Virus record (IMG/VR): IMGVR_UViG_3300033145_003233
Span: 124,001 to 188,000 of that record
Strand: one strand, 5' to 3'
Length of the DNA: 64,000 nt
The notes beneath the pieces were generated by a model. That model was not told the DNA's origin. It made no database searches and saw nothing but the letters and a program-made list of their open reading frames with translations. Made by a program: the position numbers and the translations under genes. Of this stretch, positions 48,863 through 63,637 are shown in pieces. Position 1 is the first letter of the stretch; each line of letters begins with the position of its first letter.

Positions 48863-49122
48863 TTTAAAAACTCCCAAAAAAGAAACTAATTTAGTTAAAC
48901 TATACGATAGTCTAGACAAGTATTAATATAACAGATTCTTGTTAGTAGTTCAACTCTTTTCTCTATTTTTCTATCATAGATTATGGATAGGAAATAAAGA
49001 AAATAGATATAACTTGTTAGTCTATAGGAAGTTATGTAAAATGATAAAAGTGGAAATATATTTTATTTTTTGCTAAAGTTTCTTGACAATAGATCCGAAG
49101 AATAATAAGTTCTAATTAAATA

Positions 49123-49163
49123 TCCCCGGTAGGACTCGAACCTACAACATCCAGCTTAGGAAG
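49123..49163 (-). pseudogene. 3' half of tRNA-Arg(CCT)
   Basis: CCTAA-GCTGG..GTAGG-TTCGAGT-CCTAC-CGGGGA; 5' half replaced by ORF end. Confidence 0.7.
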
Positions 49164-49368
49164 ACATTCTAGTAAGTTTCCATTTTTGAATTTTTTTCTC
49201 CATTTTTTCTTCAGCTTCTTCTTTATCTCGACCCCAAGTTTCTCCGAAATCATCTTCTATTTTAGCATCATTACAATACATAGATTGGACTTTGGTAACA
49301 TAATAATATCTATTGCCAATTGGTGGTAACAATTCTCGACTATCTATATAATATTCATACTTATTCAT
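49156..49368 (-). CDS. hypothetical protein
   Basis: GGGAG RBS; stop lies in tRNA-half anticodon loop. Confidence 0.7.
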   Translation of the reverse strand: MNKYEYYIDSRELLPPIGNRYYYVTKVQSMYCNDAKIEDDFGETWGRDKEEAEEKMEKKIQKWKLTRMSS

Positions 49369-49397
49369 TATGTTCTCCCTTGATTATACAAATGAAA

Positions 49398-49474
49398 CAC
49401 CTCAGGTAGGGATCGAACCCACATGTGTCCATTTACCCTTTCATCTGCTTAGAAGGCAGAGGGGATACTGAGGC
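49398..49474 (-). tRNA. atypical tRNA-Arg(TCT) lacking a normal D-arm
   Basis: acceptor GCCTCAG/CTGAGGT, TCTGC-CTTCTAA-GCAGA directly after a 7-nt connector, T-arm GTGGG-TTCGATC-CCTAC. Confidence 0.75.
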
Positions 49475-49479
49475 AAAAC

Positions 49480-50172
49480 CTAACTTTTTACCCATTTTCT
49501 TATTGAGTTATCAGAAACACCATATTTCCTACCAACAGCACAATAGTTAGTTTCTTCTATTTCTTGTAACAACCGTTCTTTAGACGGTCTATTTTTAACT
49601 TTTCTTTGTTCTATATCGACACAGTTTTTACACATATCTAATATAGAATATTTTTTTATTTCTTTTCCACATTTTTTACAATTATGCTTTTTTCTATTTT
49701 TTCTTCCAGCAAAAGTTTCTTGTTGACTATTGCAATTAGGACATAATAATCTTAAATTTTCTAATCTATGATCATTATTAACTCCATTTATATGATCTAA
49801 AACCATTACTAAATTTTGATTGTTATGAATTGGTAATTGATTACAAATAACACATCTATTTTCTAACATCCCATTTTGTAATAATCTTTTTTTAAGATTT
49901 CCTCTATCATAAGTAGAATTCTCTATCATAGCCTCTTTCAAAGGAAGAGATCTTTCTGGAAATTTTCTGTTTTTATTACTATTTAAACCTAGAGATATAT
50001 GAGAATAATCGATACTTTCTTCATCCAGTCTTTTTTTTAAAGCCTTATAATTACTACCTGCTATAACTAAATCAAAATACCTAATAATGGCAGCAATGCT
50101 ATCACTTTTAGCAACTATATTCTTTAATTCTTCGGTAGATATGCCCCAGATTATACTTGTTCTTTTTCTCAT
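49480..50172 (-). CDS. HNH endonuclease
   Basis: LDHINGVNNDHRLENLRLLCPNCNSQ; C-terminal HTH. Confidence 0.9.
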   Translation of the reverse strand: MRKRTSIIWGISTEELKNIVAKSDSIAAIIRYFDLVIAGSNYKALKKRLDEESIDYSHISLGLNSNKNRKFPERSLPLKEAMIENSTYDRGNLKKRLLQNGMLENRCVICNQLPIHNNQNLVMVLDHINGVNNDHRLENLRLLCPNCNSQQETFAGRKNRKKHNCKKCGKEIKKYSILDMCKNCVDIEQRKVKNRPSKERLLQEIEETNYCAVGRKYGVSDNSIRKWVKS

Positions 50173-50278
50173 CTCATTTTCTCCTATATAAATAACTTCT
50201 ATCTATATATTCGAGATAAAAGCCAGGACTCCTTTAATAAAATATTATATCCTCCTAATAAATAATAGAAATAAAAAA

Positions 50279-50350
50279 TACTCCTACAGAGAATCGAACT
50301 CTGATCTTCAGGGCGAAAACCTAATATCCTAACCGTTAGACGACAGGAGC
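50279..50350 (-). tRNA. tRNA-Glu(TTC)
   Basis: TTAGG-TTTTCGC-CCTGA. Confidence 0.85.
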
Positions 50351-50354
50351 AAAA

Positions 50355-50436
50355 TGCGGCTGAGAGGAGTCGAACCTCCACGCCTTGCGGCACAAGATTC
50401 TAAATCTTGCGTGTCTGCCAGTTTCACCACAACCGC
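50355..50436 (-). tRNA. tRNA-Leu(TAG)
   Basis: CAAGA-TTTAGAA-TCTTG, variable arm. Confidence 0.92.
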
Positions 50437-50441
50437 TTAAA

Positions 50442-50513
50442 TACGGGATACCGGACTCGAACCGATAGCTCCGACTTGGAAGGACGGCATGTTACCAATT
50501 ACACCAATCCCGC
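50442..50513 (-). tRNA. tRNA-Gly(TCC)
   Basis: CCGTC-CTTCCAA-GTCGG. Confidence 0.88.
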
Positions 50514-50520
50514 TTAATTT

Positions 50521-50643
50521 ACAGATAGGTAAGGATTTGCACCTTACAATTCTAATTTAGGGATGTTAGAATCTAACACGGGCAGGATAAATTAACTACC
50601 CCTTAGCACCCACATAATATTTACCTATTTCACCACTACCTGT
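50521..50643 (-). ncRNA. expanded tRNA-like RNA
   Basis: acceptor ACAGGTAG/CTATCTGT, D-like TGGTGAAATAGGTAAA, T-arm TAAGG-TGCAAAT-CCTTA; about 45 extra nt centrally. Confidence 0.6.
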
Positions 50644-50647
50644 CTAA

Positions 50648-50718
50648 AGGCCGATGAGGGAATCGAACCCTCTTACACACTTTTGCAGAGTGCGACCTTG
50701 CCAATCGGACAATCGGCC
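50648..50718 (-). tRNA. tRNA-Cys(GCA)
   Basis: GCACT-CTGCAAA-AGTGT. Confidence 0.88.
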
Positions 50719-50719
50719 A

Positions 50720-50793
50720 TGGGGTGATCGAGGGAATTCGAATCCCTACTCGCAGGATCACAACCTGCTGTGCTGCCATTACACCACGACCAC
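50720..50793 (-). tRNA. tRNA-His(GTG)
   Basis: G-1 and CCA encoded; GCAGG-TTGTGAT-CCTGC. Confidence 0.92.
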
Positions 50794-50795
50794 AA

Positions 50796-50876
50796 TGCCA
50801 GAAGGTGGATTTGCACCACCAAGACCTCTCGGCCACAGTTTTACAGACTGCTTGGCTCACTAATGCCTGCCCTGAC
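50796..50876 (-). tRNA. tRNA-Tyr(GTA)
   Basis: GCAGT-CTGTAAA-ACTGT, variable arm. Confidence 0.85.
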
Positions 50877-50880
50877 GGAA

Positions 50881-50952
50881 TACCCCCACCTGGAATCGAA
50901 CCAGGAACTCAAGGTTAAGAGCCTAGTATTTTCCCAATTAAACTATAGAGGC
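50881..50952 (-). tRNA. tRNA-Lys(CTT)
   Basis: CTAGG-CTCTTAA-CCTTG. Confidence 0.85.
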
Positions 50953-50955
50953 GCA

Positions 50956-51462
50956 TTAAAAGTTAAATAGATTCCTATAATAATTAGGATCCTTCATTTT
51001 TATCTCATCTTCTATTTCTATATGGCAATTTGAACAATACATATCACATTTATTAAATTCTTCAAGTATTGTCTCCCATTTTTTCGACCAAAGATTATTA
51101 ATTGTTAATCCAAAATTCTTTTGAGAAGGATCTCGATGATGAAATACCAATGCTTTAACATTCTTTTTATATCCACATCTTTTACAAGAGCCTCCCGCTT
51201 TTGCTACTAATTCTTGCTTTTTATTCCATCCTCTTTTATATATATTCCCTCTATGTTTTTGTTTAGATTCTTCACTCCAACAATAATAAGGCCCTTTTTT
51301 CTTAGCAGGACGACTAGGATCATCAGATTTTGTATTATGACCTCTATAGGGAGAACATTTTAAACAAAATTTTCTATTTCCAAGGTTCTTATTTTTTCCA
51401 TCAATTTTTGTCCAGTGAGGGATATATTCCCCACATTTTCTGCAATCTCTTTTATTACTCAT
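50956..51462 (-). CDS. HNH endonuclease
   Basis: CKRCGY..ALVFHH..KCDMYCSNCHIE. Confidence 0.88.
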   Translation of the reverse strand: MSNKRDCRKCGEYIPHWTKIDGKNKNLGNRKFCLKCSPYRGHNTKSDDPSRPAKKKGPYYCWSEESKQKHRGNIYKRGWNKKQELVAKAGGSCKRCGYKKNVKALVFHHRDPSQKNFGLTINNLWSKKWETILEEFNKCDMYCSNCHIEIEDEIKMKDPNYYRNLFNF

Positions 51463-51554
51463 TGCATATCTCCTATAAAATAACTCTTATAGAAGATATA
51501 TTCTGTAACTTAATTAAAACTCCTCTTTCTATTTACTTTTTAAGTTACAATGAA

Positions 51555-51639
51555 TGAGGGTAGGAGGATTCGAACCTCCAGCGTCCTTACGGATCCGGGT
51601 TAAAAGCCCGGTGCAGCCTACCGTATCTGCAACACCCCC
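51555..51639 (-). tRNA. tRNA-Lys(TTT) with long variable arm
   Basis: CCGGG-CTTTTAA-CCCGG; 15-nt variable region with TCC-GTAA-GGA hairpin. Confidence 0.85.
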
Positions 51640-51776
51640 TATATTTTACCTGATTTCTCTTGTTTTCGTTTCATGAGAATTTTCCTTTCTATTCTCTTTA
51701 AGAAGAATAATTAAATTTGAACAACTAACTCCTCCAGCCGCAAAACCCATACTAAACCAAAAGAGAGGATGAATTA

Positions 51777-52190
51777 GTCAATTACCTCCACCATAAAGGT
51801 GGAGGCTTGTAATTAGCGTCAGGATGACGCTACTACAATAGGCTGATTGACATCAGCCTTACTAAGGTAACATATAGTATCTTAGTAATGTTCTTTAACT
51901 AATTATAAGGATTCACTAATTACAACCGTTAACTCTAATTTAGAGTGTCTTACCTGCCGTAGGCAGGAAAGTGACTTATAAGGGCCTGTGAGTTTTACTT
52001 TAACAAGATTTGTTAAAAACTCCATACTCTTAACTTTAAAAAGAACTATTATATAATTCGTCAGAAAGTAGTTAAAACCTTTAAGAAAATGATAATTTTA
52101 GAAAAAATAAGTTTTGAGATACTTCGTCAGCCTTTGGCTGACTTAATGTCTCATTCCTCCCCTCCCACAAGAGAAGGGGTTTCCTGAGAC
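51777..52190 (+). mobile_element. non-autonomous IS200/IS605-family (IscB/TnpB-type) remnant
   Basis: starts GTCAATTA-CCTCCACC-ATAAA-GGTGGAGG-CTTG; ends CATTCCTCCCCTCCCACAAGAGAAGGGGTTTCCTG; no ORF inside. Confidence 0.6.
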
Positions 52191-52292
52191 CCGATTAATG
52201 AAGACACAAAAATAGCTGTAACTCCTATTGTAATAAGACTACTAAACATAACAGTACTTATAAATAAAGAAATAATTCGTTTCCGTTCCATA

Positions 52293-52580
52293 CTAATCTC
52301 CTTTCTTCCATAATTTTTGTAAAAATCTTATTATTTTATTAGAAGGTTTTTGAGCTTTTATCACCTCTACTATATCTGTTATATTCTTTTTTTGTCTAAA
52401 AATCTTATCACATTCTGGACAATATCTTTCGTGCAAATGAGTTTTCATTCCCCAACAAGATATAGGGATTTTTGTATGCATAGTATTTTTATTACCACAT
52501 AAAGGAATATTCCCCTCAGCAACATGATAGAAAAAACTGCTATGAATACTTTCTCTTATAACTAAATCTTTTTCACTCAT
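52293..52580 (-). CDS. hypothetical protein
   Basis: H..C..C..C motif. Confidence 0.7.
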   Translation of the reverse strand: MSEKDLVIRESIHSSFFYHVAEGNIPLCGNKNTMHTKIPISCWGMKTHLHERYCPECDKIFRQKKNITDIVEVIKAQKPSNKIIRFLQKLWKKGD

Positions 52581-52759
52581 AGATCTTCTTCTTTAATTTC
52601 TTTGCCTTTACAAGTAAAAATAATTACATCAGTTAATAATGGACAATCAGGAGGAAGATCATTATAGCTAGATGCTGTTTTTGTAATATTACATCTTGGA
52701 CCAGAAACCCCATATCCTTCTAAGAAACATTCTCCACAATTTTCTACTTCTATTTTCAT
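52577..52759 (-). CDS. Cys-rich hypothetical protein
   Basis: CGEC..C..CP. Confidence 0.68.
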   Translation of the reverse strand: MKIEVENCGECFLEGYGVSGPRCNITKTASSYNDLPPDCPLLTDVIIFTCKGKEIKEEDL

Positions 52760-53269
52760 TTATTCTAATCCTTTCTTTACTACATCCCAATCTATATGAC
52801 TCCATTTCTGATCTTTTGATTGTTCTAATAATGACTCAGCTCTTTTATTCCCATATGATAAGATTCTTTCAGCATGTTCTTCCGGTGTTATCTTCTTAGG
52901 TGCTTTATAAGGAGGAAGGCCTAAAGCCCTATTTATCTCAGGTTCTTTTTTGAGAGGTGCTCGTGCCTTTTTTAAGATCTTCTCTTTCTCTTCCTTTTCA
53001 TCTTTTTCTTTTTTCGCCGAAACAAAATCAAAACCACACCCTGGGCATTTCTTTGTAACTCCTCCTATAATGATGTTACATTCTGGGCATTTCTTTCTTC
53101 CTTGTCCCAAAGATGTATAAATTTTAGGGGCTACTACCTTATTCTTTTCTTTTAAAAGATCTTCTCTTATCTGTTTTGTGGGGAAATGATATCCACAACT
53201 ACAAAGAGAACTTCTTGCTCCTAATTCGGTGTGACAATTAGGACAATCTTTTTTACCTCTACCTGACAT
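52760..53269 (-). CDS. double zinc-ribbon protein
   Basis: GRGKKDCPNC..CSCG and GQGRKKCPEC..CPGCG. Confidence 0.8.
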   Translation of the reverse strand: MSGRGKKDCPNCHTELGARSSLCSCGYHFPTKQIREDLLKEKNKVVAPKIYTSLGQGRKKCPECNIIIGGVTKKCPGCGFDFVSAKKEKDEKEEKEKILKKARAPLKKEPEINRALGLPPYKAPKKITPEEHAERILSYGNKRAESLLEQSKDQKWSHIDWDVVKKGLE

Positions 53270-53414
53270 TGTTAATCTCCATTATTATTCGGTGCTAATA
53301 AGATAGATATTAGTCCCTACAGGAATGGTAGTTCATCCTAATATCTACACTATTTCCATTATAACTTGATTGATAGGGGCTATAAGTCCCTAGGTCATAA
53401 TGACCATCTTCAAT

Positions 53415-53924
53415 CTAATATAATGAAAAAACAGTTGTCTGGAAAATAAATGGAAATTCTGCTTTTAAATCGTTTCTAAAAACAGTATTATATTTAAAAT
53501 TAGTGGTAAGAATGATAACAGGTATTATTATGTATATGGATACAAATAGAATAAGAGGAAAAAAGTTGTCTCCTTTCTTTTTTTTATTATCATAACAATT
53601 ATCTCGAAAACATATTATATTCCATAATAATAAAAATACACAAAATATTGTATATAAAACCCAGGCTGTCTCATCGTCCATAGGCAAATCCCCCGGAGAA
53701 TCGATCCAGCTAATAACAGGCAACCAACTCCCACATAAAAAAGATACTATTATAGCTCCTATAATAGATCCCTTAAATAAGCTATAATAGTATTTCATTT
53801 CTCCTTTTACTTCATTAGCCATTATTCTTCTACGTTTGATTTTCTCCGCTTCTTTAAGGATCTTTGCTTCTTTAAGGATCTTTCTAACTTCTCTTACATT
53901 TTTTTCCCACCAGCTCTCACTCAT
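53415..53924 (-). CDS. multi-pass membrane protein
   Basis: three hydrophobic helices; reads through repeat copy 53437. Confidence 0.7.
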   Translation of the reverse strand: MSESWWEKNVREVRKILKEAKILKEAEKIKRRRIMANEVKGEMKYYYSLFKGSIIGAIIVSFLCGSWLPVISWIDSPGDLPMDDETAWVLYTIFCVFLLLWNIICFRDNCYDNKKKKGDNFFPLILFVSIYIIIPVIILTTNFKYNTVFRNDLKAEFPFIFQTTVFSLY

Positions 53925-54011
53925 GCTCTTATCCCCATTAAATTATTATTTCATAAATAGTTATTCATCCTATATAGTTATTATAGAAAAACAATTGTCT
54001 GGAAAATTAAA

Positions 54012-54087
54012 TGGGTCCTCTTGGATTTGAACCAAGGATATCCAAGTTATGAGCTTGGTGCTTTAGGCCAGGCTAAGCTAAGAACCC
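54012..54087 (-). tRNA. tRNA-Met/Ile2(CAT)
   Basis: CCAAG-CTCATAA-CTTGG. Confidence 0.88.
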
Positions 54088-54094
54088 AAAGAAG

Positions 54095-54167
54095 TGGTAC
54101 TCCCCGGAGTCGAACCGGGTCCTCAAGATTTTCAGTCTTGCGCTAAATCCACATCAGCTAGAGCACC
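54095..54167 (-). tRNA. tRNA-Phe(GAA)
   Basis: CAAGA-CTGAAAA-TCTTG. Confidence 0.9.
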
Positions 54168-54630
54168 TTTTTTGTAGATAATGAACTTCTGCATGACAAT
54201 TCTTACAGAGTAAATCACACTTTTTAGCTTCTTTCTCGAGTCTCTCCCATTTCAATAACAAACCCGAATTGCTAATTGACATCTCTTTTTCTTCTGGATC
54301 TCTATGATGAAAATCCATACTAGCAATACATTTATTATATCCACATTTTATACATTTACTTCCCTGTAACTCTATTAGAGCTTTTTTTCTTTCTTCTCTT
54401 TTATTTTTTTGATAAGACCAATATTTTTTTCTATTGTTATCTTTTTTTCTTCTGTTTTTATTGATCTCGAATTCTTGGAAAGTTTCTCCATATCTACACA
54501 GCTTAGCATGATTCCCACTCCCAAAAGGAGAACAATTAAGACAATATTTTCTCCTTTGCATATTCCTTTGTTTTCCATCAATCTTGACTTTAGTTTTAAA
54601 TTCTTCTCCGCATAATTTACATGTTTTCAT
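54154..54630 (-). CDS. HNH endonuclease
   Basis: CIKCGYNKC..MDFHH..KCDLLCKNCHAEVH; stop overlaps tRNA-Phe 5' end. Confidence 0.88.
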   Translation of the reverse strand: MKTCKLCGEEFKTKVKIDGKQRNMQRRKYCLNCSPFGSGNHAKLCRYGETFQEFEINKNRRKKDNNRKKYWSYQKNKREERKKALIELQGSKCIKCGYNKCIASMDFHHRDPEEKEMSISNSGLLLKWERLEKEAKKCDLLCKNCHAEVHYLQKRCSS

Positions 54631-54710
54631 TTTTATACCTAGATTAACAGTCGCTCTAGATATATTCGATATAATAGCTCAAAAACCTTTAATTAATAAA
54701 AACTGTTTTA

Positions 54711-54782
54711 AGCTCCCTGCCGGAATCGAACCGACTTTTCTGGAGTACGAAACCAGTAGATCACCATTTATCCTTAGGAAGC
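54711..54782 (-). tRNA. tRNA-Thr(CGT)
   Basis: CTGGT-TTCGTAC-TCCAG (one mismatch). Confidence 0.75.
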
Positions 54783-54784
54783 AA

Positions 54785-54856
54785 AGCCGATGAGAGGAGT
54801 CGAACCCCCATTCCCTGATTACAAAACAGGTGTCTTAGCCATTAGACGACAGCGGC
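54785..54856 (-). tRNA. tRNA-Thr(TGT)
   Basis: CCTGT-TTTGTAA-TCAGG. Confidence 0.82.
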
Positions 54857-54888
54857 ATGATTAAAAACTTTTACCTTCAGCATATCTT

Positions 54889-55458
54889 TTATAATTTATC
54901 TAGCATTTCTCTTGGAGTTAAATGAAAAAAAGAAAAAACCCATTTTCCATTTTTTAAATATAAATGTCTTTTTACATGACAATTCTTACAAATTATTTCA
55001 AAATTTTCCATAACATTATTTGTTCTATCTTTATCTTTATGATGAACTTCCAAAAGATACTCTTTATCTTCTGAACATCCTTCACAAACAGGATTTATAT
55101 GATTTTTTATTAACTTTCTATATATCTCCCTACCTTGAGATGTTCCATAATGAGAAGGTCTTATTTCAGGACAATTCCCTTTTAGACTTTGTGATTTTTC
55201 TTTACATTTCCTTGAGCAAAAATGGAAACCATATTTTGAATTTTTAAGCTTAGATGGAGGTCTTTCTATCTTATTATTACAATTATAACAATAAACCGTA
55301 ATCCTATTTTTACGACTTATATCATGACATTTTTTATTACAATATTTTTTAGGCTTAGAAGCATTTTTTCTTCTTAAAAATTCTTTTCTACAATATTTAC
55401 AACTATGTTTTTCTGCTCTTCTTTTTTCCCCAGATTCCATAATAAATAATTGTTCCAT
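54889..55458 (-). CDS. HNH endonuclease with CxxC repeats
   Basis: LEVHHKDKDRTNNVMENFEIICKNCHVKRH. Confidence 0.88.
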   Translation of the reverse strand: MEQLFIMESGEKRRAEKHSCKYCRKEFLRRKNASKPKKYCNKKCHDISRKNRITVYCYNCNNKIERPPSKLKNSKYGFHFCSRKCKEKSQSLKGNCPEIRPSHYGTSQGREIYRKLIKNHINPVCEGCSEDKEYLLEVHHKDKDRTNNVMENFEIICKNCHVKRHLYLKNGKWVFSFFHLTPREMLDKL

Positions 55459-55541
55459 TTAAATCTCCTATAAAATAGATATCTAACTATTATATATTCA
55501 ATATAAATGGGAGGAATCCTTCATTGCATTGCAAATTTTAA

Positions 55542-55614
55542 TGGAGACTGAGGGTTATGATCCCTCTACTGAACTTTGCAAGAGTTCTGTGATACCCGAT
55601 TTCACCAAGCCCCC
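55542..55614 (-). tRNA. tRNA-Ala(TGC)
   Basis: G3:U70; GAACT-CTTGCAA-AGTTC. Confidence 0.88.
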
Positions 55615-55645
55615 AAAGTAGCACCGCCTAAGCAGTGCTACGTTT

Positions 55646-55775
55646 GTAGATGTGTGTGAGCAAATAAGGATTTAGCGTGCTGCCATTACACTATAGGATT
55701 GATCTCTCAATCCTAGCAAGATTCGAACTTGCTCTGCTCGTTCCGTAGACGATAACTTATTCACATTCAACCTAC
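55646..55775 (-). ncRNA. circularly permuted tRNA-Arg(ACG)-like RNA
   Basis: order: anticodon arm, T-arm, acceptor 3' strand, GAGA loop, acceptor 5' strand, D-arm; termini complementary. Confidence 0.8.
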
Positions 55776-55779
55776 GTAA

Positions 55780-55854
55780 TCGGAGTATCCGGATTTGAAC
55801 CGAAATTATTCCTGGCCCCAAACCAGGTGCCATACCAAATTAGGCGATACTCCG
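55780..55854 (-). tRNA. tRNA-Pro(TGG)
   Basis: CCTGG-TTTGGGG-CCAGG. Confidence 0.88.
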
Positions 55855-55863
55855 TATAATTAA

Positions 55864-55936
55864 TCTGGGCGGAAGGATTTGAACCTTCACCCCCTGGCTC
55901 CAGACCAGGAATGCTGCCAAGTAACACTTCGCCCAG
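55864..55936 (-). tRNA. tRNA-Pro(TGG), second copy with atypical loop (C33, A37)
   Basis: CCTGG-TCTGGAG-CCAGG. Confidence 0.75.
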
Positions 55937-56002
55937 GACAGACAAAAACTCCATAGCTATGAAACTATGAAGTTTTGTCTAATATTAACATTTGTTTAAG
56001 AA

Positions 56003-56077
56003 TTGCGGGAGGTGGATTTGAACCACCGACCTTCAGGTTATGAGCCTGACAAGCTAACCAAACTGCTCTACCCCGCT
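56003..56077 (-). tRNA. initiator-type tRNA-Met(CAT)
   Basis: 1:72 mismatch, GCGGGGTAGAGCAG, TCAGG-CTCATAA-CCTGA. Confidence 0.9.
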
Positions 56078-56093
56078 ATGTTTTTAATAATAG

Positions 56094-56204
56094 TGTACAG
56101 GGTAGGATTTACACCTACATTTTTTCACAACAACGATAAATCACTACTGCAAAACGTCTTAAATAGAAAGGCGAACCAAACTACTTTATTAAGACCACCT
56201 GAAC
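56094..56204 (-). ncRNA. expanded tRNA-like RNA
   Basis: acceptor GTTCAGG/CCTGTAC, T-arm GTAGG-TGTAAAT-CCTAC, 7-bp D-position stem GTCTTAA/TTAAGAC, GU-rich long stem at anticodon position. Confidence 0.55.
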
Positions 56205-56205
56205 A

Positions 56206-56280
56206 TGGCATCGGGGCATGGACTTAAACCATAGCATCCCATCAGTTAAGCTGATGCGCTTTACATGTAAGCTACCCGAT
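56206..56280 (-). pseudogene. degenerate tRNA, apparent TTA anticodon (probably Asn-derived)
   Basis: CATCA-GCTTAAC-TGATG; G73 and CCA encoded; short acceptor 5' strand. Confidence 0.6.
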
Positions 56281-56286
56281 ATAAAA

Positions 56287-56358
56287 TAGTAGAAACTGGA
56301 GTTGAACCAGTATAATCCTTCTTATGAGAAAGGAGCATTCCCGTTATGCTATTCTACC
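56287..56358 (-). tRNA. tRNA-Met/Ile2(CAT)
   Basis: CCTTT-CTCATAA-GAAGG. Confidence 0.82.
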
Positions 56359-57014
56359 TAGAAAAGCCATTTATCAGAATTATCATTTACATATTCCTTT
56401 ATAGAACCAAAAATTTGTTGAGCAATCTGAGTATTTCCGATAGCAATAGAACAAATACCATAAGGATGTTTAATTTTAGAGGTGCTATAATATTTACTTT
56501 TTAAAGTGCATTTTCTTAAACAACTCTTTGGTAATTTTAATTGATTACACCAATAAGTCTGAATCTCTTCTAAAGTTAAACCATTATCAAGATAATATTG
56601 AAAAGTAAGAGCAACATCTTCATTAGCAACCGAAAAATACTTTCTAAGAAAATTAATAAAAAAAGACATCAGCTTAGGATCGCTATTTACTAACCTTACA
56701 TAATTCTTACATTTACTTCCTTCTCCCCAGAATAAAGCACATCCAAAAGCATAATATTGATCTTCTGTCCTAGCTTTTTCTCTTCCCTGTTGTTGATACT
56801 CTCTTCTTTTATTCCTAAAATTCTCAGAATGATTTATATATGCTTTATCTCTAAATTGTAATTTCTTTTTTTGCTTATTTGTAAGGTCAATATCTCTAAC
56901 CCATATACTAACAGAACCTTTAGATACTTTAATTTGTTTTGAAATATTTCTAAGCGACATTCCTTGTTTGCGAAGTTTCCTACATTCTGCTTTTTCTTTA
57001 ATTTTTGCTTTCAT
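56358..57014 (-). CDS. HTH plus LAGLIDADG-like endonuclease
   Basis: N-terminal HTH; YYAFGCALFWGEGSK..NSDP. Confidence 0.72.
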   Translation of the reverse strand: MKAKIKEKAECRKLRKQGMSLRNISKQIKVSKGSVSIWVRDIDLTNKQKKKLQFRDKAYINHSENFRNKRREYQQQGREKARTEDQYYAFGCALFWGEGSKCKNYVRLVNSDPKLMSFFINFLRKYFSVANEDVALTFQYYLDNGLTLEEIQTYWCNQLKLPKSCLRKCTLKSKYYSTSKIKHPYGICSIAIGNTQIAQQIFGSIKEYVNDNSDKWLF

Positions 57015-57372
57015 AATAGAACCCCTTATATATTCAAACTCTTATTAAGCATTCGAAATAAAAGGGTTCATATCCTTTATTTATTTAAAATATATGAAAG
57101 TTGCGTGATATCCCATTTCACTATATTGCTGTGAAATTATTAAAAATTACGGATGTGTTATTGCAAAAAAGCTGGTTTCGGTTTTGATATCGATAACTTT
57201 TTCACTTCAACCCGTATAAATGTCAATTAAACTTTTCATAGGTCAAGTCTATTTTTATTTTAAAGAACCATAAACTACAGTATATAGCATTATACCACAT
57301 CTGCTTTCACTTTCAAGGACTTTTTTATATTTTTCTGAAAAAAGTTATAAACTCTTTTAAAAAAATGACTTA

Positions 57373-57444
57373 TACCCCTACAGAGAGTCGAACTCTGGTC
57401 TTCAGTTAGAGAGACTGATATCCTATCCACTAGACGACAGGGGC
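57373..57444 (-). tRNA. tRNA-Glu(CTC)
   Basis: TCAGT-CTCTCTA-ACTGA. Confidence 0.85.
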
Positions 57445-57450
57445 AAATAA

Positions 57451-57536
57451 CGGAGAGTAATCGAATCGAACGATCAACCAGTAATAGGTTGGGCCAGTTT
57501 TCAAGACTGGGTGGGAACCATTTCCCCCTACACTCC
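57451..57536 (-). tRNA. tRNA-Ser(TGA)
   Basis: CCAGT-CTTGAAA-ACTGG, long variable arm. Confidence 0.85.
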
Positions 57537-57541
57537 ATAAG

Positions 57542-57627
57542 CGGAAAAGACAGGGAACGATCCTGCACTACCCGAAAGTAGGATAGTTTAGCAAACTACT
57601 TGGCACGCCAACCTTGCCAGCTTTTCC
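57542..57627 (-). tRNA. tRNA-Ser(GCT)
   Basis: GTAGT-TTGCTAA-ACTAT, long variable arm. Confidence 0.85.
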
Positions 57628-57691
57628 AAAAATAGGCAAGAGCCGTGTGTAACCCTTTTACTCCCTAACTCTCCTTGTTAGGGAAACCTAA

Positions 57692-57763
57692 CCCCCTCAC
57701 ACGGTTACGATCCGAGTATTTTTGCTCGACAAGCAAATGTGATAGCCAGTTCACTATAAGGGG
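57692..57763 (-). tRNA. tRNA-Asp(GTC)
   Basis: TTTGC-TTGTCGA-GCAAA. Confidence 0.82.
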
Positions 57764-57775
57764 TTAATGAGAACA

Positions 57776-57848
57776 ATATTCAAGGACGAGTCGAACACCC
57801 ATTTCCGGCTTGTTGGCCGGTGCCCTACCATTAGACGACTAAAGTATC
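57776..57848 (-). pseudogene. degenerate tRNA (Val-like)
   Basis: D and T arms recognisable; 6-nt loop CAACAA; broken acceptor stem. Confidence 0.5.
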
Positions 57849-57890
57849 CTCGATATCGTATCTAGAAAAATATATCGGATAGTTCTCAAA

Positions 57891-57965
57891 TGGGCGAGAG
57901 AGGATTTGAACCTCTGACTATTTCCGTGTAAAAGAAACACTCTATCCAGACTGAGTTACACGCCC
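57891..57965 (-). tRNA. tRNA-Val(TAC)
   Basis: TTTCT-TTTACAC-GGAAA. Confidence 0.88.
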
Positions 57966-58086
57966 TAAAAACTATTCGAACTATTATTTTATTTGATATG
58001 AACCATAAAATAATTTTGTATATAAATTAAAGGTTTTTATAAAAATAGTTCGAATATATAATAGAAACATTTATAGGAGAAATATT

Positions 58087-58707
58087 ATGAATAAAGGTCT
58101 TAAAGAAAAAATAATATCATTAAGAATAAAAGGGACTAGTTATCGTCAAATTGCTAAAAAACTAAATTGCTCTAGAGGAACAATTAGCTTACATTGTTCT
58201 AAATTAGAAGAGAATAAAACAATTGAACAATGTAATAGAAAAATGTTGGCTTTTCACCAAAATGAAAGTCTTAATTTTTCAAAAAAAACAATTAGAATCA
58301 TAAAAATACTTTATAATTACGGAATTCAAACTACTGAAATAGCAGATATCCTTAATATAGATATTAGACCAATTAGATCTTTTTGTATAAAACTTCCTAA
58401 AAAAGATTACTCCTTTTTATCAAACTATGAGAAAGTTAAGAGAAGAAGAAAGAAAATTAAAATATTAGGAGTTATCTATAAAGGAGGCAAATGCCAAAAA
58501 TGCGGTTATAATAAATATTTTGAAAATCTAGAATTTCATCATGTAGATCCTAACAAAAAAGAATTTACAATCGCTCAGAAATGTAACCATAGGTGGTTAA
58601 CTATTAAAAAAGAATTAGACAAATGTGTTTGTTTATGTTCAACTTGTCACAGAGAAGAACATATAAAAAAACATATTACAGATATAACACCCATAGATTT
58701 AGAATAG
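58087..58707 (+). CDS. HTH plus HNH endonuclease
   Basis: GGKCQKCGYNK..LEFHH..KCVCLCSTCHREEH. Confidence 0.88.
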   Translation: MNKGLKEKIISLRIKGTSYRQIAKKLNCSRGTISLHCSKLEENKTIEQCNRKMLAFHQNESLNFSKKTIRIIKILYNYGIQTTEIADILNIDIRPIRSFCIKLPKKDYSFLSNYEKVKRRRKKIKILGVIYKGGKCQKCGYNKYFENLEFHHVDPNKKEFTIAQKCNHRWLTIKKELDKCVCLCSTCHREEHIKKHITDITPIDLE

Positions 58708-58775
58708 GATTAATAGGAGTTGAACCTATATACCCGCCTTATCAGGACGGAGCTTTGCCATTAAGCTATAATCCT
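58705..58775 (-). tRNA. tRNA-Ile(GAT)
   Basis: CCGTC-CTGATAA-GGCGG. Confidence 0.88.
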
Positions 58776-58868
58776 AGAAATGGGGAGTAGGCAAACTCCC
58801 CATGGGAATTTACAAAACTTCATTTGTGGCCCTCTTGGACCCCCTATTAACTTTTTATAGATCATAAA

Positions 58869-58967
58869 TCGTAATATCTTACGACTTATATAATATTTCC
58901 TGCTTAAGTCGTAATATCTTACGACTTATATAATATTTCCTGCTTAAGTCGTAATATCTTACGACTT
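58869..58967. repeat. 40-bp tandem repeat (x2.5) containing palindrome AAGTCGTAA-TATC-TTACGACTT
   Basis: three palindromes separated by identical 18-nt linkers. Confidence 0.9.
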
Positions 58968-58969
58968 AG

Positions 58970-59040
58970 CTCCACCACCTAGATTCGAACTAGGACCGAA
59001 GCATTAACAGTGCTCTATGCTACCGTTACACCATGATGGA
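58970..59040 (-). tRNA. tRNA-Asn(GTT)
   Basis: GAGCA-CTGTTAA-TGCTT. Confidence 0.9.
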
Positions 59041-59047
59041 ATTATAT

Positions 59048-59380
59048 TTATTGGTTATAATCTTCTTTGTCATGTAATTCCATATGACATCTACAACATA
59101 ACAAATCACATTTATCTACTTCTTTTTTAAGCCTCTTAAGACTTTTATCATAACTCTTAGCTATTTGTAATTCTTTTTCTTTTTTATCACGATGATGAAA
59201 AGAATAAGCAGCTGGTATACCTTTATTATATCCGCATTCTTGACACTTACCACCCTTGTAAAGAACAAGCTTCCATTTAGTTCTTTTTCGACAATTAATT
59301 ACATTTCTGGATCTTCTTTGCTTTTGATATTCTTCCCACTTTTCTTCTCCCATCTCTGCTCTGCGTTTAGTGATCCTCAT
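59048..59380 (-). CDS. HNH endonuclease
   Basis: GGKCQECGYNK..YSFHH..KCDLLCCRCHMELH. Confidence 0.88.
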   Translation of the reverse strand: MRITKRRAEMGEEKWEEYQKQRRSRNVINCRKRTKWKLVLYKGGKCQECGYNKGIPAAYSFHHRDKKEKELQIAKSYDKSLKRLKKEVDKCDLLCCRCHMELHDKEDYNQ

Positions 59381-59478
59381 TTTTCTCTCCTATATAGATA
59401 ATTTACTATCTATATATTCGATATATAATGATAAACTCCTTTAGTTAACCAATAAATATTTACTTTTTAAAGATCTAA

Positions 59479-59549
59479 CAGCCCCATCAGGGTTCGAACC
59501 TGAGACGCGAGATTCAAAGTCTCGAATGTTACCGCTACACCACAGGGCT
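59479..59549 (-). tRNA. tRNA-Gln(TTG)
   Basis: CGAGA-CTTTGAA-TCTCG. Confidence 0.9.
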
Positions 59550-59703
59550 ATTCGGTGCTACTATCGTCTTTATTCAATTCTTCAAAAAGTTCTTCTACTG
59601 TATCACAAGTAAAAATATCTTTACCAAGATGAGCATCTTCAAAAGCTTGTATTGTCTCAGCATTCGGTACTAAAAATTTTCTTTTTCTTTTTATAGTTCC
59701 CAT
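59548..59703 (-). CDS. RelB/DinJ-like antitoxin C-terminal domain protein (51 aa)
   Basis: PNAETIQAFEDAHLGK..DTVEELFEELN; start trimmed to MGTIK. Confidence 0.65.
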   Translation of the reverse strand: MGTIKRKRKFLVPNAETIQAFEDAHLGKDIFTCDTVEELFEELNKDDSSTE

Positions 59704-59713
59704 ATCTACCAAT

Positions 59714-59743
59714 AAAAAAAGACGACTGAGTTTTTCAGTCGCC
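59714..59743 (-). terminator. intrinsic terminator-like hairpin
   Basis: CGACTGA/TCAGTCG stem then T7. Confidence 0.6.
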
Positions 59744-60336
59744 TTTGAACGAGAAAATATATATTCAAAAGCGACTATCCAGGGCTTCCTACTGTGAGGA
59801 TAAACCAATTATCCATGTAGGATTGGACTGACGGTTCCGCCGTAGCGGCCGATAAATCCTGCCTACATAGATTGCGTCTATGTTTAGTTATGGCTTCTGG
59901 ATATTTGATTGTGATAGTCATCTTCTGGGACTTTCCCTAATAAATAAATAACGAATTACTATATTATATCATATATAGTCGGCATTTCCTTCTTTTTTCT
60001 TTAATCTTTTCAACTTTTTTTTCAATACTTATAAAAGCTGGGTTAACTACCCAAAAAAGCGATACCCTCTTGAGTAGTTAAACCCAGTCGGAGGAGGCTG
60101 TTTAATTTAAAAAGCGGGAAAAAGGAAAACAGGCCCTTTTAGGTTTTGTCGGCAGACATCCTATCTTCCTATTCCCAATCTTCTTCATCAACTCCATATC
60201 AAAACACATTATACCAGAAATCTTTCACTTTTCAACTACTTTATAAAAAAAACATTTGTCTGGAAAAATAAGACTCCTATAGAAGCACATCTCACAAGCC
60301 CGCCAAAGTTTCTGATCCACACTATCCACAGGAGTC

Positions 60337-61263
60337 TTAGTAATTACCAAACAAACATCTACAAATGAAGCTACGCTCACTCGGTGCTACTTCTTCTTCT
60401 ACAAAGCCACTATAGTCAGGAAGGGAGTTATAATAAACCTCCATATCCCTAACAGAGATACCATGAGTGAGACACCATCTATCATCTTCCAAACTATAAT
60501 CTGAAATACACTCTACACCATTATCAGAATGCTCCCAGATACTATAAAACTCTTTACCAGTTCTACCATATCGGTGCTTGATACCTACACCCAAAACAAA
60601 CAAGTTGCCTCTTTGACCCTGTAGATGTTTGAGATTCAGTGCTATATCTACTAAGTGAGGCAAAGAAGTGCCACCCTTAATAGTACCATCCTGGTTTAAT
60701 TGAGAAAGTAGTATCACATGACACTTAACCTCTAAACAAGCATCCCTAAATCCTTTTTTAATACCACCACCCTCTATAATCAAACGGGCTTGTTTCTTAC
60801 TACCTGTCTCAAATTCTTCTATCTCATTGACACTATCAACAATAACTATGCTAGGATTAACATAGTAAATAGCCTCTATCATCTTTCCCAAGGTCTTAGC
60901 ATCACTACAAATAAAACTATCAAGTTGAGAGCCAGAGAGACCAGACGTTTGTTTTACCCAACCAGCAAAGGTTGAAACATCTACCTCATTTTGAAAATAA
61001 AGAACCTTTACGCCTGCTCTAGCATAACTACCTGCCAACTTTATAGCTGCTCTACTTTTACCTACACCACTCTCACCACTCCACAAGCTAATCTTACCTT
61101 GTGGAATTCCCCATTGGTAAGTTATTTGGCGTCTAGCATGAGTAGCATTAAAAGTGCTACAACCATAAATCCAATCTAACTCTTGGAATCCGGTAGGCGC
61201 TCTTAATACAGGTTTAGCCTCAACCTCTGAGATTTTAAAAATATTATCCATTCCTGTCTCCAT
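60337..61263 (-). CDS. RadA/Sms-like RecA-fold ATPase
   Basis: TGFQELD..GESGVGKS (Walker A), IVIVDS (Walker B), IKGGTSLPHLVD, KHRYG; no N-terminal Zn finger or Lon-like domain. Confidence 0.85.
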   Translation of the reverse strand: METGMDNIFKISEVEAKPVLRAPTGFQELDWIYGCSTFNATHARRQITYQWGIPQGKISLWSGESGVGKSRAAIKLAGSYARAGVKVLYFQNEVDVSTFAGWVKQTSGLSGSQLDSFICSDAKTLGKMIEAIYYVNPSIVIVDSVNEIEEFETGSKKQARLIIEGGGIKKGFRDACLEVKCHVILLSQLNQDGTIKGGTSLPHLVDIALNLKHLQGQRGNLFVLGVGIKHRYGRTGKEFYSIWEHSDNGVECISDYSLEDDRWCLTHGISVRDMEVYYNSLPDYSGFVEEEVAPSERSFICRCLFGNY

Positions 61264-61301
61264 TCTATTATATTGAAAGAGTTTTCCAATTGTCTGGAAA
61301 A

Positions 61302-61778
61302 TTATTTCTTATTTCCCGAAAAAAAGACACAAGCATATAAAATACATATTATAGCAGGACTCCAAAATAGACACGCAGGATGAAATATCCTGGGACTTAT
61401 ATATAAACAAGCTGCTGATTTGTCATGCATAGCAAAAACCCTATGATCTGTATGGTATCCATTAAGAGTATCACCACCAGGCCTCCACATCCTACCAGGT
61501 ATAGTAACACTCATCAAGCTCTTTAGATCTACAGAATGACCATCATTATTGTATACCCTATGAACTAATAGATCTGAACCATCTTCTGCTTTTAAAGGAT
61601 TAGGAGTAGCTACCTCCAGAACAAATAATCCCACTACTGCCAAGACAACAGCTATAAAAGAGCCATTAGGAGACCTAGCTGCCAATATAAAGCAGATTAT
61701 TAGATAAACTATGCCTACAGCACAAAAAGCTGATTTTATGCTCCACAAGCTCACTGGGATGTCAATTTCTGCTAACAT
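61302..61778 (-). CDS. membrane protein
   Basis: three hydrophobic helices; stop in repeat. Confidence 0.72.
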   Translation of the reverse strand: MLAEIDIPVSLWSIKSAFCAVGIVYLIICFILAARSPNGSFIAVVLAVVGLFVLEVATPNPLKAEDGSDLLVHRVYNNDGHSVDLKSLMSVTIPGRMWRPGGDTLNGYHTDHRVFAMHDKSAACLYISPRIFHPACLFWSPAIICILYACVFFSGNKK

Positions 61779-61837
61779 ATAGTTTCCTTTCTATATTAGT
61801 ATAGCATAAAATTGATTGTCTGGAAAATTATTCGGTG

Positions 61838-62449
61838 CTATAGGGTGAAATCCCTACCTTTACAGAAATCAGATATAGCCTGCATTATCTTCTTAATCTC
61901 AACCCTATAGGGACCACCAAACCAATAATTCTGAGTTTTTAGCTCAGTGAGTAGTTTTACTATTAATTCACATAGGTCGAATACATTGCTATAGTTCTTC
62001 TGATTCTTATCTGAAAACCTTTCTAGATTCTCATATTGAGTAGTAAGAGTTTTAAGGTCTTCTGTGATCTGCCCTAACTCTCCATCCATTTCTTTTTTCG
62101 CGGAAAGAAAAGTACTGACACTACTCATTTGTTGTTTCTCTTCAGTCCATCCTCTTACCCACCAATTAGAAGAATCTTGAGTTAAAGAACCACTACCATA
62201 AGGATTATCTTTAAGTTGCTTACCATCCATAAAAGCTATCTTACCTTCTGCATAAGCCTCTGACATATTAATATTGTAGAGAATAAGCTCTTCTGTAGAA
62301 GTTACTGTTTCAGATAGTTCTATTTCGGTGTTACAGTTACTACATTTTATACAACATTTACCATCTTCCCTAGACCCTATAAAAAGAGTATCATGGTAAC
62401 ATTTATTACATTTTAGCATTTTATATCCCCTGCTTAATAACATCGTCAC
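61838..62449 (-). CDS. zinc-ribbon/coiled-coil protein with RMF-like motif
   Basis: CNKC/CSNC; YAEGKIA..NPYG..WWVRGW. Confidence 0.65.
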   Translation of the reverse strand: MTMLLSRGYKMLKCNKCYHDTLFIGSREDGKCCIKCSNCNTEIELSETVTSTEELILYNINMSEAYAEGKIAFMDGKQLKDNPYGSGSLTQDSSNWWVRGWTEEKQQMSSVSTFLSAKKEMDGELGQITEDLKTLTTQYENLERFSDKNQKNYSNVFDLCELIVKLLTELKTQNYWFGGPYRVEIKKIMQAISDFCKGRDFTL

Positions 62450-63107
62450 TAGTTATAATAGTACCAATAAACTTATTACTTACATATTTATTACGGTGCT
62501 TGAGAAATTTAAACCGCTTATAATTTCTTATAGGAAAGGCCTTTGCGGTGTTAGAGTATGTAGATAATCTATAGAAGAAGATACCATTAGATATACCTCT
62601 CTTAGATACCCTCTTCATATCTATAGCAGCACCTACCTGCATTAGTTTGTAGGCATAAGGATGTCTCTCTCCTAGCCTTTGAAAGAATATGAAATTCTCT
62701 TGTATCCTACCAATGTGATCCTTACATTTTACAGCATGGTCTCTCTCTGATTTCCCCTTATATTTCTCCCAAGCATTGAAAAAACCTGGTCCCTTGGCTG
62801 GGATGGCAGACATGATTGCTTCTATCTTTTTAAGAACATCAGATAAACTATGCCATTGATTGCCACCTAACAAGAATAGAGATTGTATTTGATAATAGTA
62901 AATACCTTTTCTATAGGGGTTAAAAAATAACCTACCTGATTTTTTCCTAATTCTCTTATCTACTTTTCTAACATCTAATAACCAGCTTGTTCTAGTAGCT
63001 GTTTTCTCTTCCTCTGTCATGTGATATTTTCTTCTCAATACTAATTTTCCATTCTTACTGATGACTTGCTTCCCTGCTTCTTCCGGGTTGTAAATTATAT
63101 CGGACAT
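62421..63107 (-). CDS. basic hypothetical protein
   Basis: 228 aa ORF, AAGGA RBS. Confidence 0.78.
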   Translation of the reverse strand: MSDIIYNPEEAGKQVISKNGKLVLRRKYHMTEEEKTATRTSWLLDVRKVDKRIRKKSGRLFFNPYRKGIYYYQIQSLFLLGGNQWHSLSDVLKKIEAIMSAIPAKGPGFFNAWEKYKGKSERDHAVKCKDHIGRIQENFIFFQRLGERHPYAYKLMQVGAAIDMKRVSKRGISNGIFFYRLSTYSNTAKAFPIRNYKRFKFLKHRNKYVSNKFIGTIITSDDVIKQGI

Positions 63108-63140
63108 ATTTATATTTCCTTTCTAAAGAACCTATTTTTG

Positions 63141-63272
63141 TAGTCTGGAAAGTTATTTGATAGTTTAATTTTCCAGACTATCGATTTTCTATATCATACT
63201 ACTTTCTAACCAACTTGTCAAGCAAAAAACAGTTGTCTGGAAAGTTATTCGATAGTTTAATTTTCCAGACTA
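63141..63272. repeat. two palindromic copies of the CCAGAC repeat
   Basis: TAGTCTGGAAA-N18-TTTCCAGACTA at 63141-63180 and near-identical copy at 63233-63272. Confidence 0.85.
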
Positions 63273-63637
63273 TTAATTTTTAGATTTAAAATCTATTTTT
63301 ATTTCAAGACAAAAAAGATCCAGTTTATCCATTTCTGTCGATAAACCATTTTTTCTTCCTATTCACTACTCTCTAGTTTTTTTAATCTTTCATTTAAATT
63401 TTCAACATTTTTTCTATTAGTTTGAATGTTACGATCTATTGTGTACAACAATACACCTATTACAACTATCAAAGCAATTCCATAAAATTCCAGCATTTTT
63501 CTTTCTCCTATTGATCTTTCAATTCTCTTATTTTCTTTTGTACATCTCTATGTAATTTTCTCATAAGGAAGAGATGACCACTTATAGCCAACACACATAT
63601 CCCAAAGAACACAACAACTAATATTATCTCATCCTTA

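What the first reader, a model, noticed from the sequence alone, without database searches (positions are those of the whole stretch)
63141..63272. The boundary element occurs twice as a perfect inverted pair in a large intergenic region
Seen: TAGTCTGGAAA-N18-TTTCCAGACTA and a near-identical second copy 92 bp later. These are the only places in the window where the motif is on both strands. Inference: a dimer-binding master site, such as an operator, a recombination platform for the cassettes (attI-like), or part of an origin. This suggests the motif is a protein-binding half-site and not just a -35 box.
Basis: partly seen in the sequence, partly recalled or inferred. Interest (0 to 1): 0.6.

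Follow-up and report, generated by a model that had tools for sequence, protein, structure and literature searches.

The report
Twin palindromic operators around phage promoter
In a 548-kb phage, two copies of a 40-bp palindrome sit exactly 92 bp apart on either side of a strong promoter; they are most likely binding sites for a phage DNA-binding protein whose single half-sites also mark about 40 other promoter-like junctions, an arrangement kept in many uncultured relatives.

Summary
Window 63141-63180 (site A) and 63233-63272 (site B) are two near-identical 40-bp palindromes, 92 bp apart. They are the only inverted copies of the motif in the whole 547,943-bp phage record.

It points into a conserved 228-aa gene with no known family.

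More than 50 metagenomic relatives keep the order palindrome, promoter, palindrome, gene. Dyad spacing is 91-93 bp, the arm-to-arm span is fixed and the centre sequence is free.

The arm sequence differs between phages. Within one phage all four arms carry the same variant, and so do the single copies scattered downstream. That indicates a phage-encoded, genome-specific DNA-binding factor, not an RNA hairpin or a plain -35 box.

The best candidate is the adjacent 228-aa protein, which has a weak winged-helix-like fold and keeps this position even in distant relatives. No binding, transcript start or loop was shown.

The main rival is an origin-type site for an initiator, because a RecA/DnaB-like ATPase gene always follows. 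An attI-like platform, a GC-skew switch and divergent promoters are not supported.

The parts
63141..63180 (.). Site A: 40-bp palindrome, downstream of the promoter, about +7 to +46 from the inferred start (dyad about +26)
   Evidence: homologous site in relatives
63233..63272 (.). Site B: second copy of the palindrome, upstream of the promoter, about -86 to -47 (dyad about -66)
63216..63221 (-). -35 hexamer TTGACA of the promoter between the two sites
   Evidence: 11 of 12 match to the sigma-70 consensus, spacer 17; kept in relatives
63193..63198 (-). -10 hexamer TATGAT
63185..63187 (-). Inferred transcription start, 6-8 nt after the -10; not measured
   Evidence: inference and the usual spacing of sigma-70 promoters
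63117..63121 (-). Shine-Dalgarno-like AAGGA, 9 nt before the ATG
   Evidence: read; the GAAAGG block is kept in relatives
62421..63107 (-). 228-aa protein of an uncharacterised family; candidate binder of the sites
   Evidence: no family; 193 homologues; confident model, weak winged-helix-like matches; family and its sites persist in distant relatives
60337..61263 (-). 308-aa RecA/DnaB/RadA-like ATPase, conserved partner gene of the 228-aa family
   Evidence: neighbourhood
63281..63343 (-). Conserved non-coding element just upstream of site B (ATCGAC ... TAATAGATTTT); function unknown
   Evidence: recurs in most relatives; no Rfam match
31118..61826 (-). Block of about 28 single, gene-sense half-sites (TTTCCAGAC on the - strand), one per gene junction

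Best explanation
The two palindromes are paired operators for a phage-encoded, sequence-specific DNA-binding protein. They bracket a strong host-type promoter, with dyads at about -66 and +26 and 92 bp centre to centre. That promoter drives a conserved four-gene module.

The likeliest binder is the first product of the module, the 228-aa protein. Once made, it would occupy both sites. The promoter-proximal half-site of site A, at about +8 to +16, lies inside the RNA polymerase footprint. Occupancy, perhaps reinforced by a 92-bp loop between A and B, would then throttle its own promoter.

The same protein would bind single half-sites placed 19 nt upstream of a -10-like hexamer at about 40 gene junctions. 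There it would act as a promoter-specific factor and so link an early gene to a later regulon.

Shown: the anatomy, its uniqueness in the genome, its conservation, its rigid geometry, and the covariation of all copies within each phage. Inferred: which protein binds, that it represses here and activates elsewhere, the loop, and all transcript starts.
For: 1. A promoter matching 11 of 12 consensus positions lies between the sites.

2. Among 61 relatives, pairs of strong palindromes peak sharply at 92 bp. There are 17 pairs at 92 bp, 3 at 91 and 4 at 93, and no other distance exceeds 3. The -35 starts about 31 nt after dyad B, and dyad A lies 32.5-34 nt after the -10.

3. The arm-to-arm span is fixed at 31-32 nt while the centre sequence varies freely.

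4. Thirteen different arm cores occur across phages. Within a phage, sites A and B agree at variable positions at 0.84, against 0.56 for shuffled pairings. None of 5000 shuffles reached the observed value, and the two sites were detected independently.

5. In 92 kb downstream of the gene in 32 relatives, the phage's own 8-mer occurs 42 times in sense and once in antisense. That is 1.31 per locus, against 0.053 for other phages' 8-mers.

6. In this genome, 30 of 45 single copies have TAnnnT exactly 19 nt after GAC, and 41 have an A/T tract. None of the four arms has the hexamer at that offset. In three single copies, and at site B, the half-site lies upstream of a complete -35/-10 pair, so it is not itself the -35.

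7. The 228-aa protein models confidently (pLDDT 86.5). Its best structural neighbours are almost all winged-helix DNA-binding domains.

8. Distant family members still carry paired palindromes upstream. L119 has them 93 bp apart. L120 has quite different arms. Both also carry own-type single sites downstream.
Against: No binding, footprint or transcript data exist; no sequencing run was listed.

The fold matches are weak: Z is at most 5.2, and Foldseek gave nothing at E of 0.001 or better.

The half-site centres within a palindrome are about 27 bp apart, roughly 2.6 helical turns. That is awkward for a compact dimer.

Protein-DNA covariation could not be separated from shared ancestry. Closely related proteins such as L077 and L104 go with different arm flanks.

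A few relatives keep the gene without palindromes (L060, L063, L110, L116).

The constant RecA/DnaB-like neighbour fits an initiator as well as a regulator.
Confidence: 0.55

Rival explanations
1. Origin-type site. The palindromes are binding sites of a replication initiator, the 228-aa protein, at or beside a phage origin. The promoter would supply transcriptional activation, and the downstream ATPase would be the helicase. This reading can coexist with autoregulation, as in iteron replicons.
For: The family gene is followed by an AAA_25 / RecA-DnaB-like ATPase in close and distant relatives.

The top weak fold matches include ORC/Cdc6 winged-helix domains. Language-model look-alikes are Rep_trans, Phage_CRI and RepD clusters at scores of 0.84-0.86.

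Relatives have long A/T-rich gaps, short tandem repeats and frequent contig ends just upstream.
Against: There is no GC-skew switch at this place. The switches lie at about 45-50 kb and 100-105 kb of the genome.

The dispersed copies sit at fixed offsets from -10-like hexamers and start codons, which fits gene expression rather than replication.

All protein leads are below the tools' own reliability marks.
Confidence: 0.2
2. RNA hairpins. Site B would be a terminator-like stem-loop ending the upstream operon. Site A would be a 5'-UTR stem-loop that stabilises the mRNA or serves as a nut/put-like element.
For: The arms pair: -11.9 and -13.9 kcal/mol on the gene strand, and -18.4 and -20.0 on the opposite strand, with z from -3.4 to -6.4. 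Site B is followed by a run of six T on the gene strand. One relative, L063, has an unrelated short hairpin in place of site A. Changes in the arms are compensatory.
Against: Hairpins need not share a sequence between A and B, nor with about 40 single arms that cannot pair.

Loops of 10-18 nt with a fixed span are atypical, and the terminator scan finds none here. Site A has an A-run, not a T-run, after it.

The more stable fold is on the strand that carries no genes. Site B lies upstream of the promoter it flanks.
Confidence: 0.1
3. Back-to-back promoter boxes. Each arm would be a -35-type element read by RNA polymerase carrying a phage sigma factor, giving divergent transcription or polymerase trapping around the early promoter.
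For: Single copies look like promoters with a fixed -10-like partner. The phage encodes four or five sigma-70-family proteins and no recognisable polymerase of its own.
Against: None of the four arms has the hexamer at the canonical offset. In many relatives the distance from site A to the ATG leaves no room for a -10 and a leader. No + strand gene exists for at least 17 kb on the far side. The 92-bp phasing would be unexplained.
Confidence: 0.1
4. Recombination platform for gene cassettes, attI-like or PeSL-like.
For: Every small gene in the 31-63 kb block is bounded by the motif, and the palindromes sit at the head of the block.
Against: No recombinase family matches any of the four genes downstream. 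Cassette ends carry single arms, not hairpins. The site is tied to a conserved promoter and gene rather than to variable cargo.
Confidence: 0.03

Closest known systems
lac operon O1-O3 auxiliary-operator pair (own knowledge)
   Same: Two dyad-symmetric copies of one site bracket a promoter, one upstream and one just after the start. Their centres are 92 bp apart, a spacing known to allow looping in vivo.
   Different: Here each palindrome spans 40 bp with half-sites about 27 bp apart, against 21 bp for lac. The protein is unrelated to LacI. Single half-sites also occur genome-wide.
Bacillus phage phi29 protein p4 sites (own knowledge)
   Same: Inverted repeats separated by a long spacer lie around early and late promoters. 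One phage protein represses early promoters and activates the late one.
   Different: No sequence or fold relation to p4 was seen. The phi29 sites are not copied at dozens of promoters.
T4 MotA box of middle promoters (own knowledge)
   Same: A phage-specific 9-bp box upstream of an ordinary -10 hexamer replaces a good -35. The activator gene is itself expressed early.
   Different: MotA boxes are not known as paired palindromes around the motA promoter. No MotA or AsiA homology was tested or seen. In several copies here the hexamer abuts the start codon.
Iteron-type initiators (RepE, RepA, pi) and lambda O (own knowledge)
   Same: These are winged-helix proteins. Dimers bind an inverted repeat at their own promoter, and monomers bind single copies elsewhere. 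A helicase gene lies nearby.
   Different: Single copies here are scattered over hundreds of kb at gene junctions, not stacked in an origin. None of these proteins appeared among the listed top-50 fold matches.
PeSL cassettes of T4-type phages (own knowledge)
   Same: A repeated promoter-bearing junction sequence lies between small genes of a variable region.
   Different: PeSLs combine an early promoter with a stem-loop at each junction. Here junctions hold one arm only, and the palindromes occur once.

Membership tests
Paired operators bracketing a promoter | Two copies of one dyad-symmetric site with a promoter between them | tested here: met
Paired operators bracketing a promoter | Spacing and position held fixed in evolution while non-contact sequence drifts | tested here: met
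   91-93 bp between dyads; the promoter is fixed to within about 1.5 nt of each dyad in most of 24 genomes
Paired operators bracketing a promoter | A protein binds the sites and changes promoter output | not testable with these tools
   no RNA or binding data; one search listed no runs
Intrinsic terminator | G+C-rich stem, loop of 3-8 nt, T-run directly after the stem | tested here: not met
   one search finds none at the sites. The centre is 10 nt between 15-nt arms, or 18 nt between the 11-nt perfect arms. Only site B has a T-run, and it is offset by 5 nt
Integron attI/attC platform | Adjacent tyrosine recombinase, and a hairpin-forming site at each cassette end | tested here: not met
   no recombinase family matches the four downstream genes; junctions carry single arms
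Replication origin | Strand-composition switch at the site | tested here: not met
Replication origin | Initiator and helicase genes adjacent, with A/T-rich and repeated DNA alongside | tested here: inconclusive
   a RecA/DnaB-like ATPase is always near, and relatives have A/T-rich repeat-bearing gaps. The initiator role is unproven
Sigma-70-type -35 box | A -10 hexamer at a fixed distance downstream | tested here: not met
   none of the four arms has it, although 30 of 45 single copies have TAnnnT exactly 19 nt after GAC
Winged-helix DNA-binding proteins (228-aa product) | Structural match to a winged-helix domain well above background | tested here: inconclusive
   best Z 5.2, nearly all rows are winged-helix domains but below the tool's mark; no Foldseek match. 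TM 0.61 by a Fur-domain row over 85 residues
T4 MotA-dependent middle promoters | MotA/AsiA-type proteins encoded by the phage | not tested
   only the promoter architecture was compared

The most novel reading that the evidence does not exclude
An uncharacterised protein family, found in these searches only on uncultured phage contigs of up to about 550 kb, acts as a master switch with a private DNA code. Each phage lineage has its own 8-9-bp word. The protein reads that word as paired palindromes, looped over 92 bp to shut its own early promoter, and as single words that switch on about 40 junction promoters. Some of those promoters are set so close to the start codon that initiation must be unconventional. 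The drifting word would insulate co-infecting relatives from each other's regulators.
Probability: 0.3. Interest if true: 0.75.

Novelty: new variant of a known kind. Interest (0 to 1): 0.6.

Why it matters
Very large phages are known almost only from metagenomes, and their gene-expression programmes are unknown.

This locus gives a concrete, testable entry point. It names a candidate regulator with no annotated relatives. It gives the exact binding word, a likely autoregulatory site with textbook-like geometry, and a list of target junctions. More than a dozen natural word variants can serve as ready-made specificity controls.

If the protein turns out to be an initiator instead, the locus would mark a replication origin in a clade where none has been mapped.

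Tried and rejected
Sequencing-run search for the locus: none was listed, so no read mapping was possible.

Exact-pattern scans of IMG/VR. The gapped palindrome gave 11 hits, which I estimate to be about the chance number, and no hit had extra motif copies. The 18-mer junction word gave one hit.

Megablast against deposited phages: no match.

A single-protein locus search in IMG/VR found nothing. A profile search found two long contigs. No relative was found in the species-representative prokaryote genomes.

Homodimer prediction for the 228-aa protein: no verdict, score 0.00. This is not evidence either way.

Mutual information between protein columns and arm positions: signals exist but follow clades, so it is inconclusive.

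Whole-record motif counts in relatives with variant arms: the metagenome records are not held, so only one IMG/VR relative could be searched. It shows 24 sense and 4 antisense copies, with the same single palindrome pair.

Rfam on the region: only a sub-threshold chance hit.

Pfam on ten longer family members: nothing.

The second gene of the module is a zinc-ribbon plus Rmf/CrpP-like protein, not an obvious DNA binder.

A literature search for the 9-mer and for promoters of huge phages found nothing relevant.

Full report
**Setting.** The window is bases 124001-188000 of a 547,943-bp IMG/VR phage record with 33.6% G+C. Nearly all genes here lie on the - strand. There are 27 tRNA genes. No recognisable phage RNA polymerase is encoded, but four or five sigma-70-family ORFs are.

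**The observation.** The text at 63141-63272 is as described.
- Each palindrome has 15-nt arms, 14 of 15 complementary, around a 10-nt centre. The two copies are a 49-nt direct repeat 92 bp apart.
- The motif is strongly over-represented: 31 hits against 1.84 expected.
- It is otherwise single-stranded in orientation. All real copies read TTTCCAGAC on the strand of the local genes.
- A genome-wide scan finds no second pair of this kind.

**What the dispersed motif is.** There are 45 single copies in the genome.
- 41 are followed by five bases and then an A- or T-tract.
- 30 have TAnnnT starting exactly 19 nt after GAC.
- 28 are prefixed by TAA. At the two junctions checked against the ORF table (33775 and 34334) that TAA is the stop codon of the gene before.
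- Three sit upstream of a complete -35/-10 pair.
- Several have a proper leader with AGGAG before the next ATG.

I read these as promoters of a phage-specific class: a genome-specific upstream word plus a generic -10.

One feature does not fit. Nine copies have the next gene's ATG exactly 25 nt after GAC, directly after the hexamer. The same spacing appears in relatives. A standard start 7 nt after the hexamer would miss that codon. This stays unexplained and needs 5'-end mapping.

**What lies at the finding.** On the gene strand a TTGACA-17-TATGAT promoter, matching 11 of 12 consensus positions, sits between the palindromes.
- With a start near 63186, site B spans about -86 to -47 and site A about +7 to +46.
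- A Shine-Dalgarno-like AAGGA and the ATG of a 228-aa ORF follow.
- There is no + strand gene on the far side for at least 17 kb.
- The cumulative GC skew runs straight through.

**Relatives.** The 228-aa protein has no Pfam, PHROG or NCBIfam match. It does have 193 homologues at 50-68% identity in metagenomes, and 273 cluster representatives in the exhaustive search. None is named or carries a known domain.

I fetched the upstream DNA of about 70 of them.
- Most show the same order: palindrome, promoter of TTGACA or TTGCAA type, palindrome, GAAAGG, ATG.
- A detection that used neither the expected distance nor similarity between the sites found 24 of 61 sequences with two strong palindromes 91-93 bp apart (17 at 92). 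No other distance was seen more than three times.
- The -35 begins about 31 nt after the upstream dyad. The downstream dyad lies 32.5-34 nt after the -10.
- The span from CTGG to CCAG is 31 or 32 nt, while the centre varies freely.

**Covariation.** The aligned half-site is a nearly invariant CTGG flanked by variable bases. Thirteen cores occur, for example GCCTGG, GACTGGTT, CTCTGGGA, TCTGGCA, TCTGGTA, GTCTAGAT and TGTGGA.
- In each phage all four arms carry the same variant. A-versus-B identity at variable positions is 0.84 against 0.56 for shuffled pairs, with none of 5000 shuffles as high.
- The single copies downstream carry it too. The phage's own 8-mer occurs 42 times in sense and once in antisense in 92 kb, about 25 times the rate of other phages' words.
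- One relative has a second pair, again 92 bp apart, ahead of strong promoters for unknown RNAs and a tRNA cluster.
- A distant family member, L119, has perfect 11-nt arms 93 bp apart, with own-type single sites downstream. Another, L120, has quite different arms (TTGCGAA) in two copies 62 bp apart.

**Inference.** A hairpin explains pairing inside one site. It does not explain why A and B share a sequence, why unpaired single arms share it too, or why span and phasing are fixed. A plain -35 box does not explain inverted arms that lack a -10 partner, nor half-sites that sit upstream of complete promoters. A phage-encoded protein with lineage-specific sequence preference explains all of this.

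The gene that keeps its place next to the sites across deep divergence is the 228-aa family.
- Its model is confident: pLDDT 86.5, pTM 0.84.
- Its weak structural neighbours are almost all winged-helix DNA-binding domains: ORC/Cdc6, linker histone, Fur, OmpR and forkhead, with Z up to 5.2. These values are below the tool's reliability mark, and Foldseek finds nothing.
- I therefore name it as the candidate binder, not as a shown binder.

**Mechanism proposed.** Early transcription would start from the consensus promoter. The product would bind both sites. The proximal half of site A overlaps the polymerase footprint, and the conserved 92-bp phasing matches the classic lac O1-O3 distance (own knowledge), so looping is plausible. 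The result would be autoregulation. At single sites the protein would act from about -36 as a promoter-specific factor. All of these steps are inferred.

**Rivals.**
- *Origin or initiator.* This is the strongest rival. The family gene is always followed, directly or after one or two small genes, by a RecA/DnaB/RadA-like ATPase. Weak protein leads point to ORC-type domains and Rep-type clusters. Relatives have A/T-rich, repeat-bearing gaps where many contigs end. Against it stand the absent skew switch and the gene-expression geometry of the dispersed copies. The two readings could both be true, as for iteron initiators that autoregulate.
- *RNA hairpins, back-to-back sigma boxes and an attI-like platform.* These are weaker, for the reasons listed under each.

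**Limits.** There is no expression or binding evidence. Transcript starts are predicted. The survey of relatives started from the protein, so sites unlinked to it would be missed. Some automated site calls in degenerate relatives are approximate.

Noticed in passing
window 31126, 33775, 34334, 35363, 36200, 37143, 37821, 40160, 43161 (- strand); also L035 and L119:3411: The next gene's ATG lies exactly 25 nt after GAC of the half-site, directly after the -10-like hexamer. Two of these ORFs begin with convincing membrane-protein N-termini. A normal sigma-70 start would fall inside the gene.
   Followed up: partly
window 63281-63343 and the homologous stretch in L032-L117: A conserved non-coding element (ATCGAC ... 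TAAAATGGA ... TAATAGATTTT) lies just upstream of site B. Many relatives' contigs begin at the same homologous point. Longer contigs carry short tandem repeats and a recurring AGCACCAAAT word upstream.
   Followed up: partly
site B centre, window 63248-63257, and relatives: The centre of the upstream palindrome often holds ACTATCGAA, and ATCGA(T/C) recurs around both sites. The centre of site A is not conserved, except that it holds AGCACC in several relatives.
   Followed up: no
L047:6188-6520 (same contig as L030): A second pair of palindromes with TCTGGTA arms, again 92 bp apart. It is followed by two TTGACA-17-TATAAT promoters whose -10 is preceded by TCTGG, then by terminator-ended unknown RNAs, then by tRNA-Gln, Asn, Ile and Thr. 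The window's counterpart is the single half-site plus promoter at 60266.
   Followed up: partly
window 936-10708 (- strand): Twelve head-to-tail paralogous ORFs of 254-293 aa with overlapping stops and starts. The one tested has no family match.
   Followed up: no
window 47686-59550: 27 tRNA genes, all on the - strand, interspersed with small ORFs and homing-endonuclease-like genes (HNH at 58087-58707 on the + strand; LAGLIDADG at 44655-46058).
   Followed up: no
window 46126-47430 (- strand): A protein with WGR, PARP regulatory and PARP catalytic domains.
   Followed up: no
G000 44.7-45.4 kb, 217.5 kb and 256.5-257.6 kb: Sigma-70-family ORFs. The first lies at the GC-skew and gene-orientation switch near 45-50 kb, back to back with a single half-site at 45573.
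   Followed up: no
window 61838-62449 (- strand) and homologues (alignment A2): The second gene of the module joins a CxxC...CxxC zinc ribbon to an Rmf/CrpP-like segment and a likely coiled coil.
   Followed up: partly
L012:807-842: An unrelated 193-kb viral contig has GTCTGGAAAACTA, 10 nt, then the inverted arm, directly after an HU-like gene. This is probably chance.
   Followed up: partly
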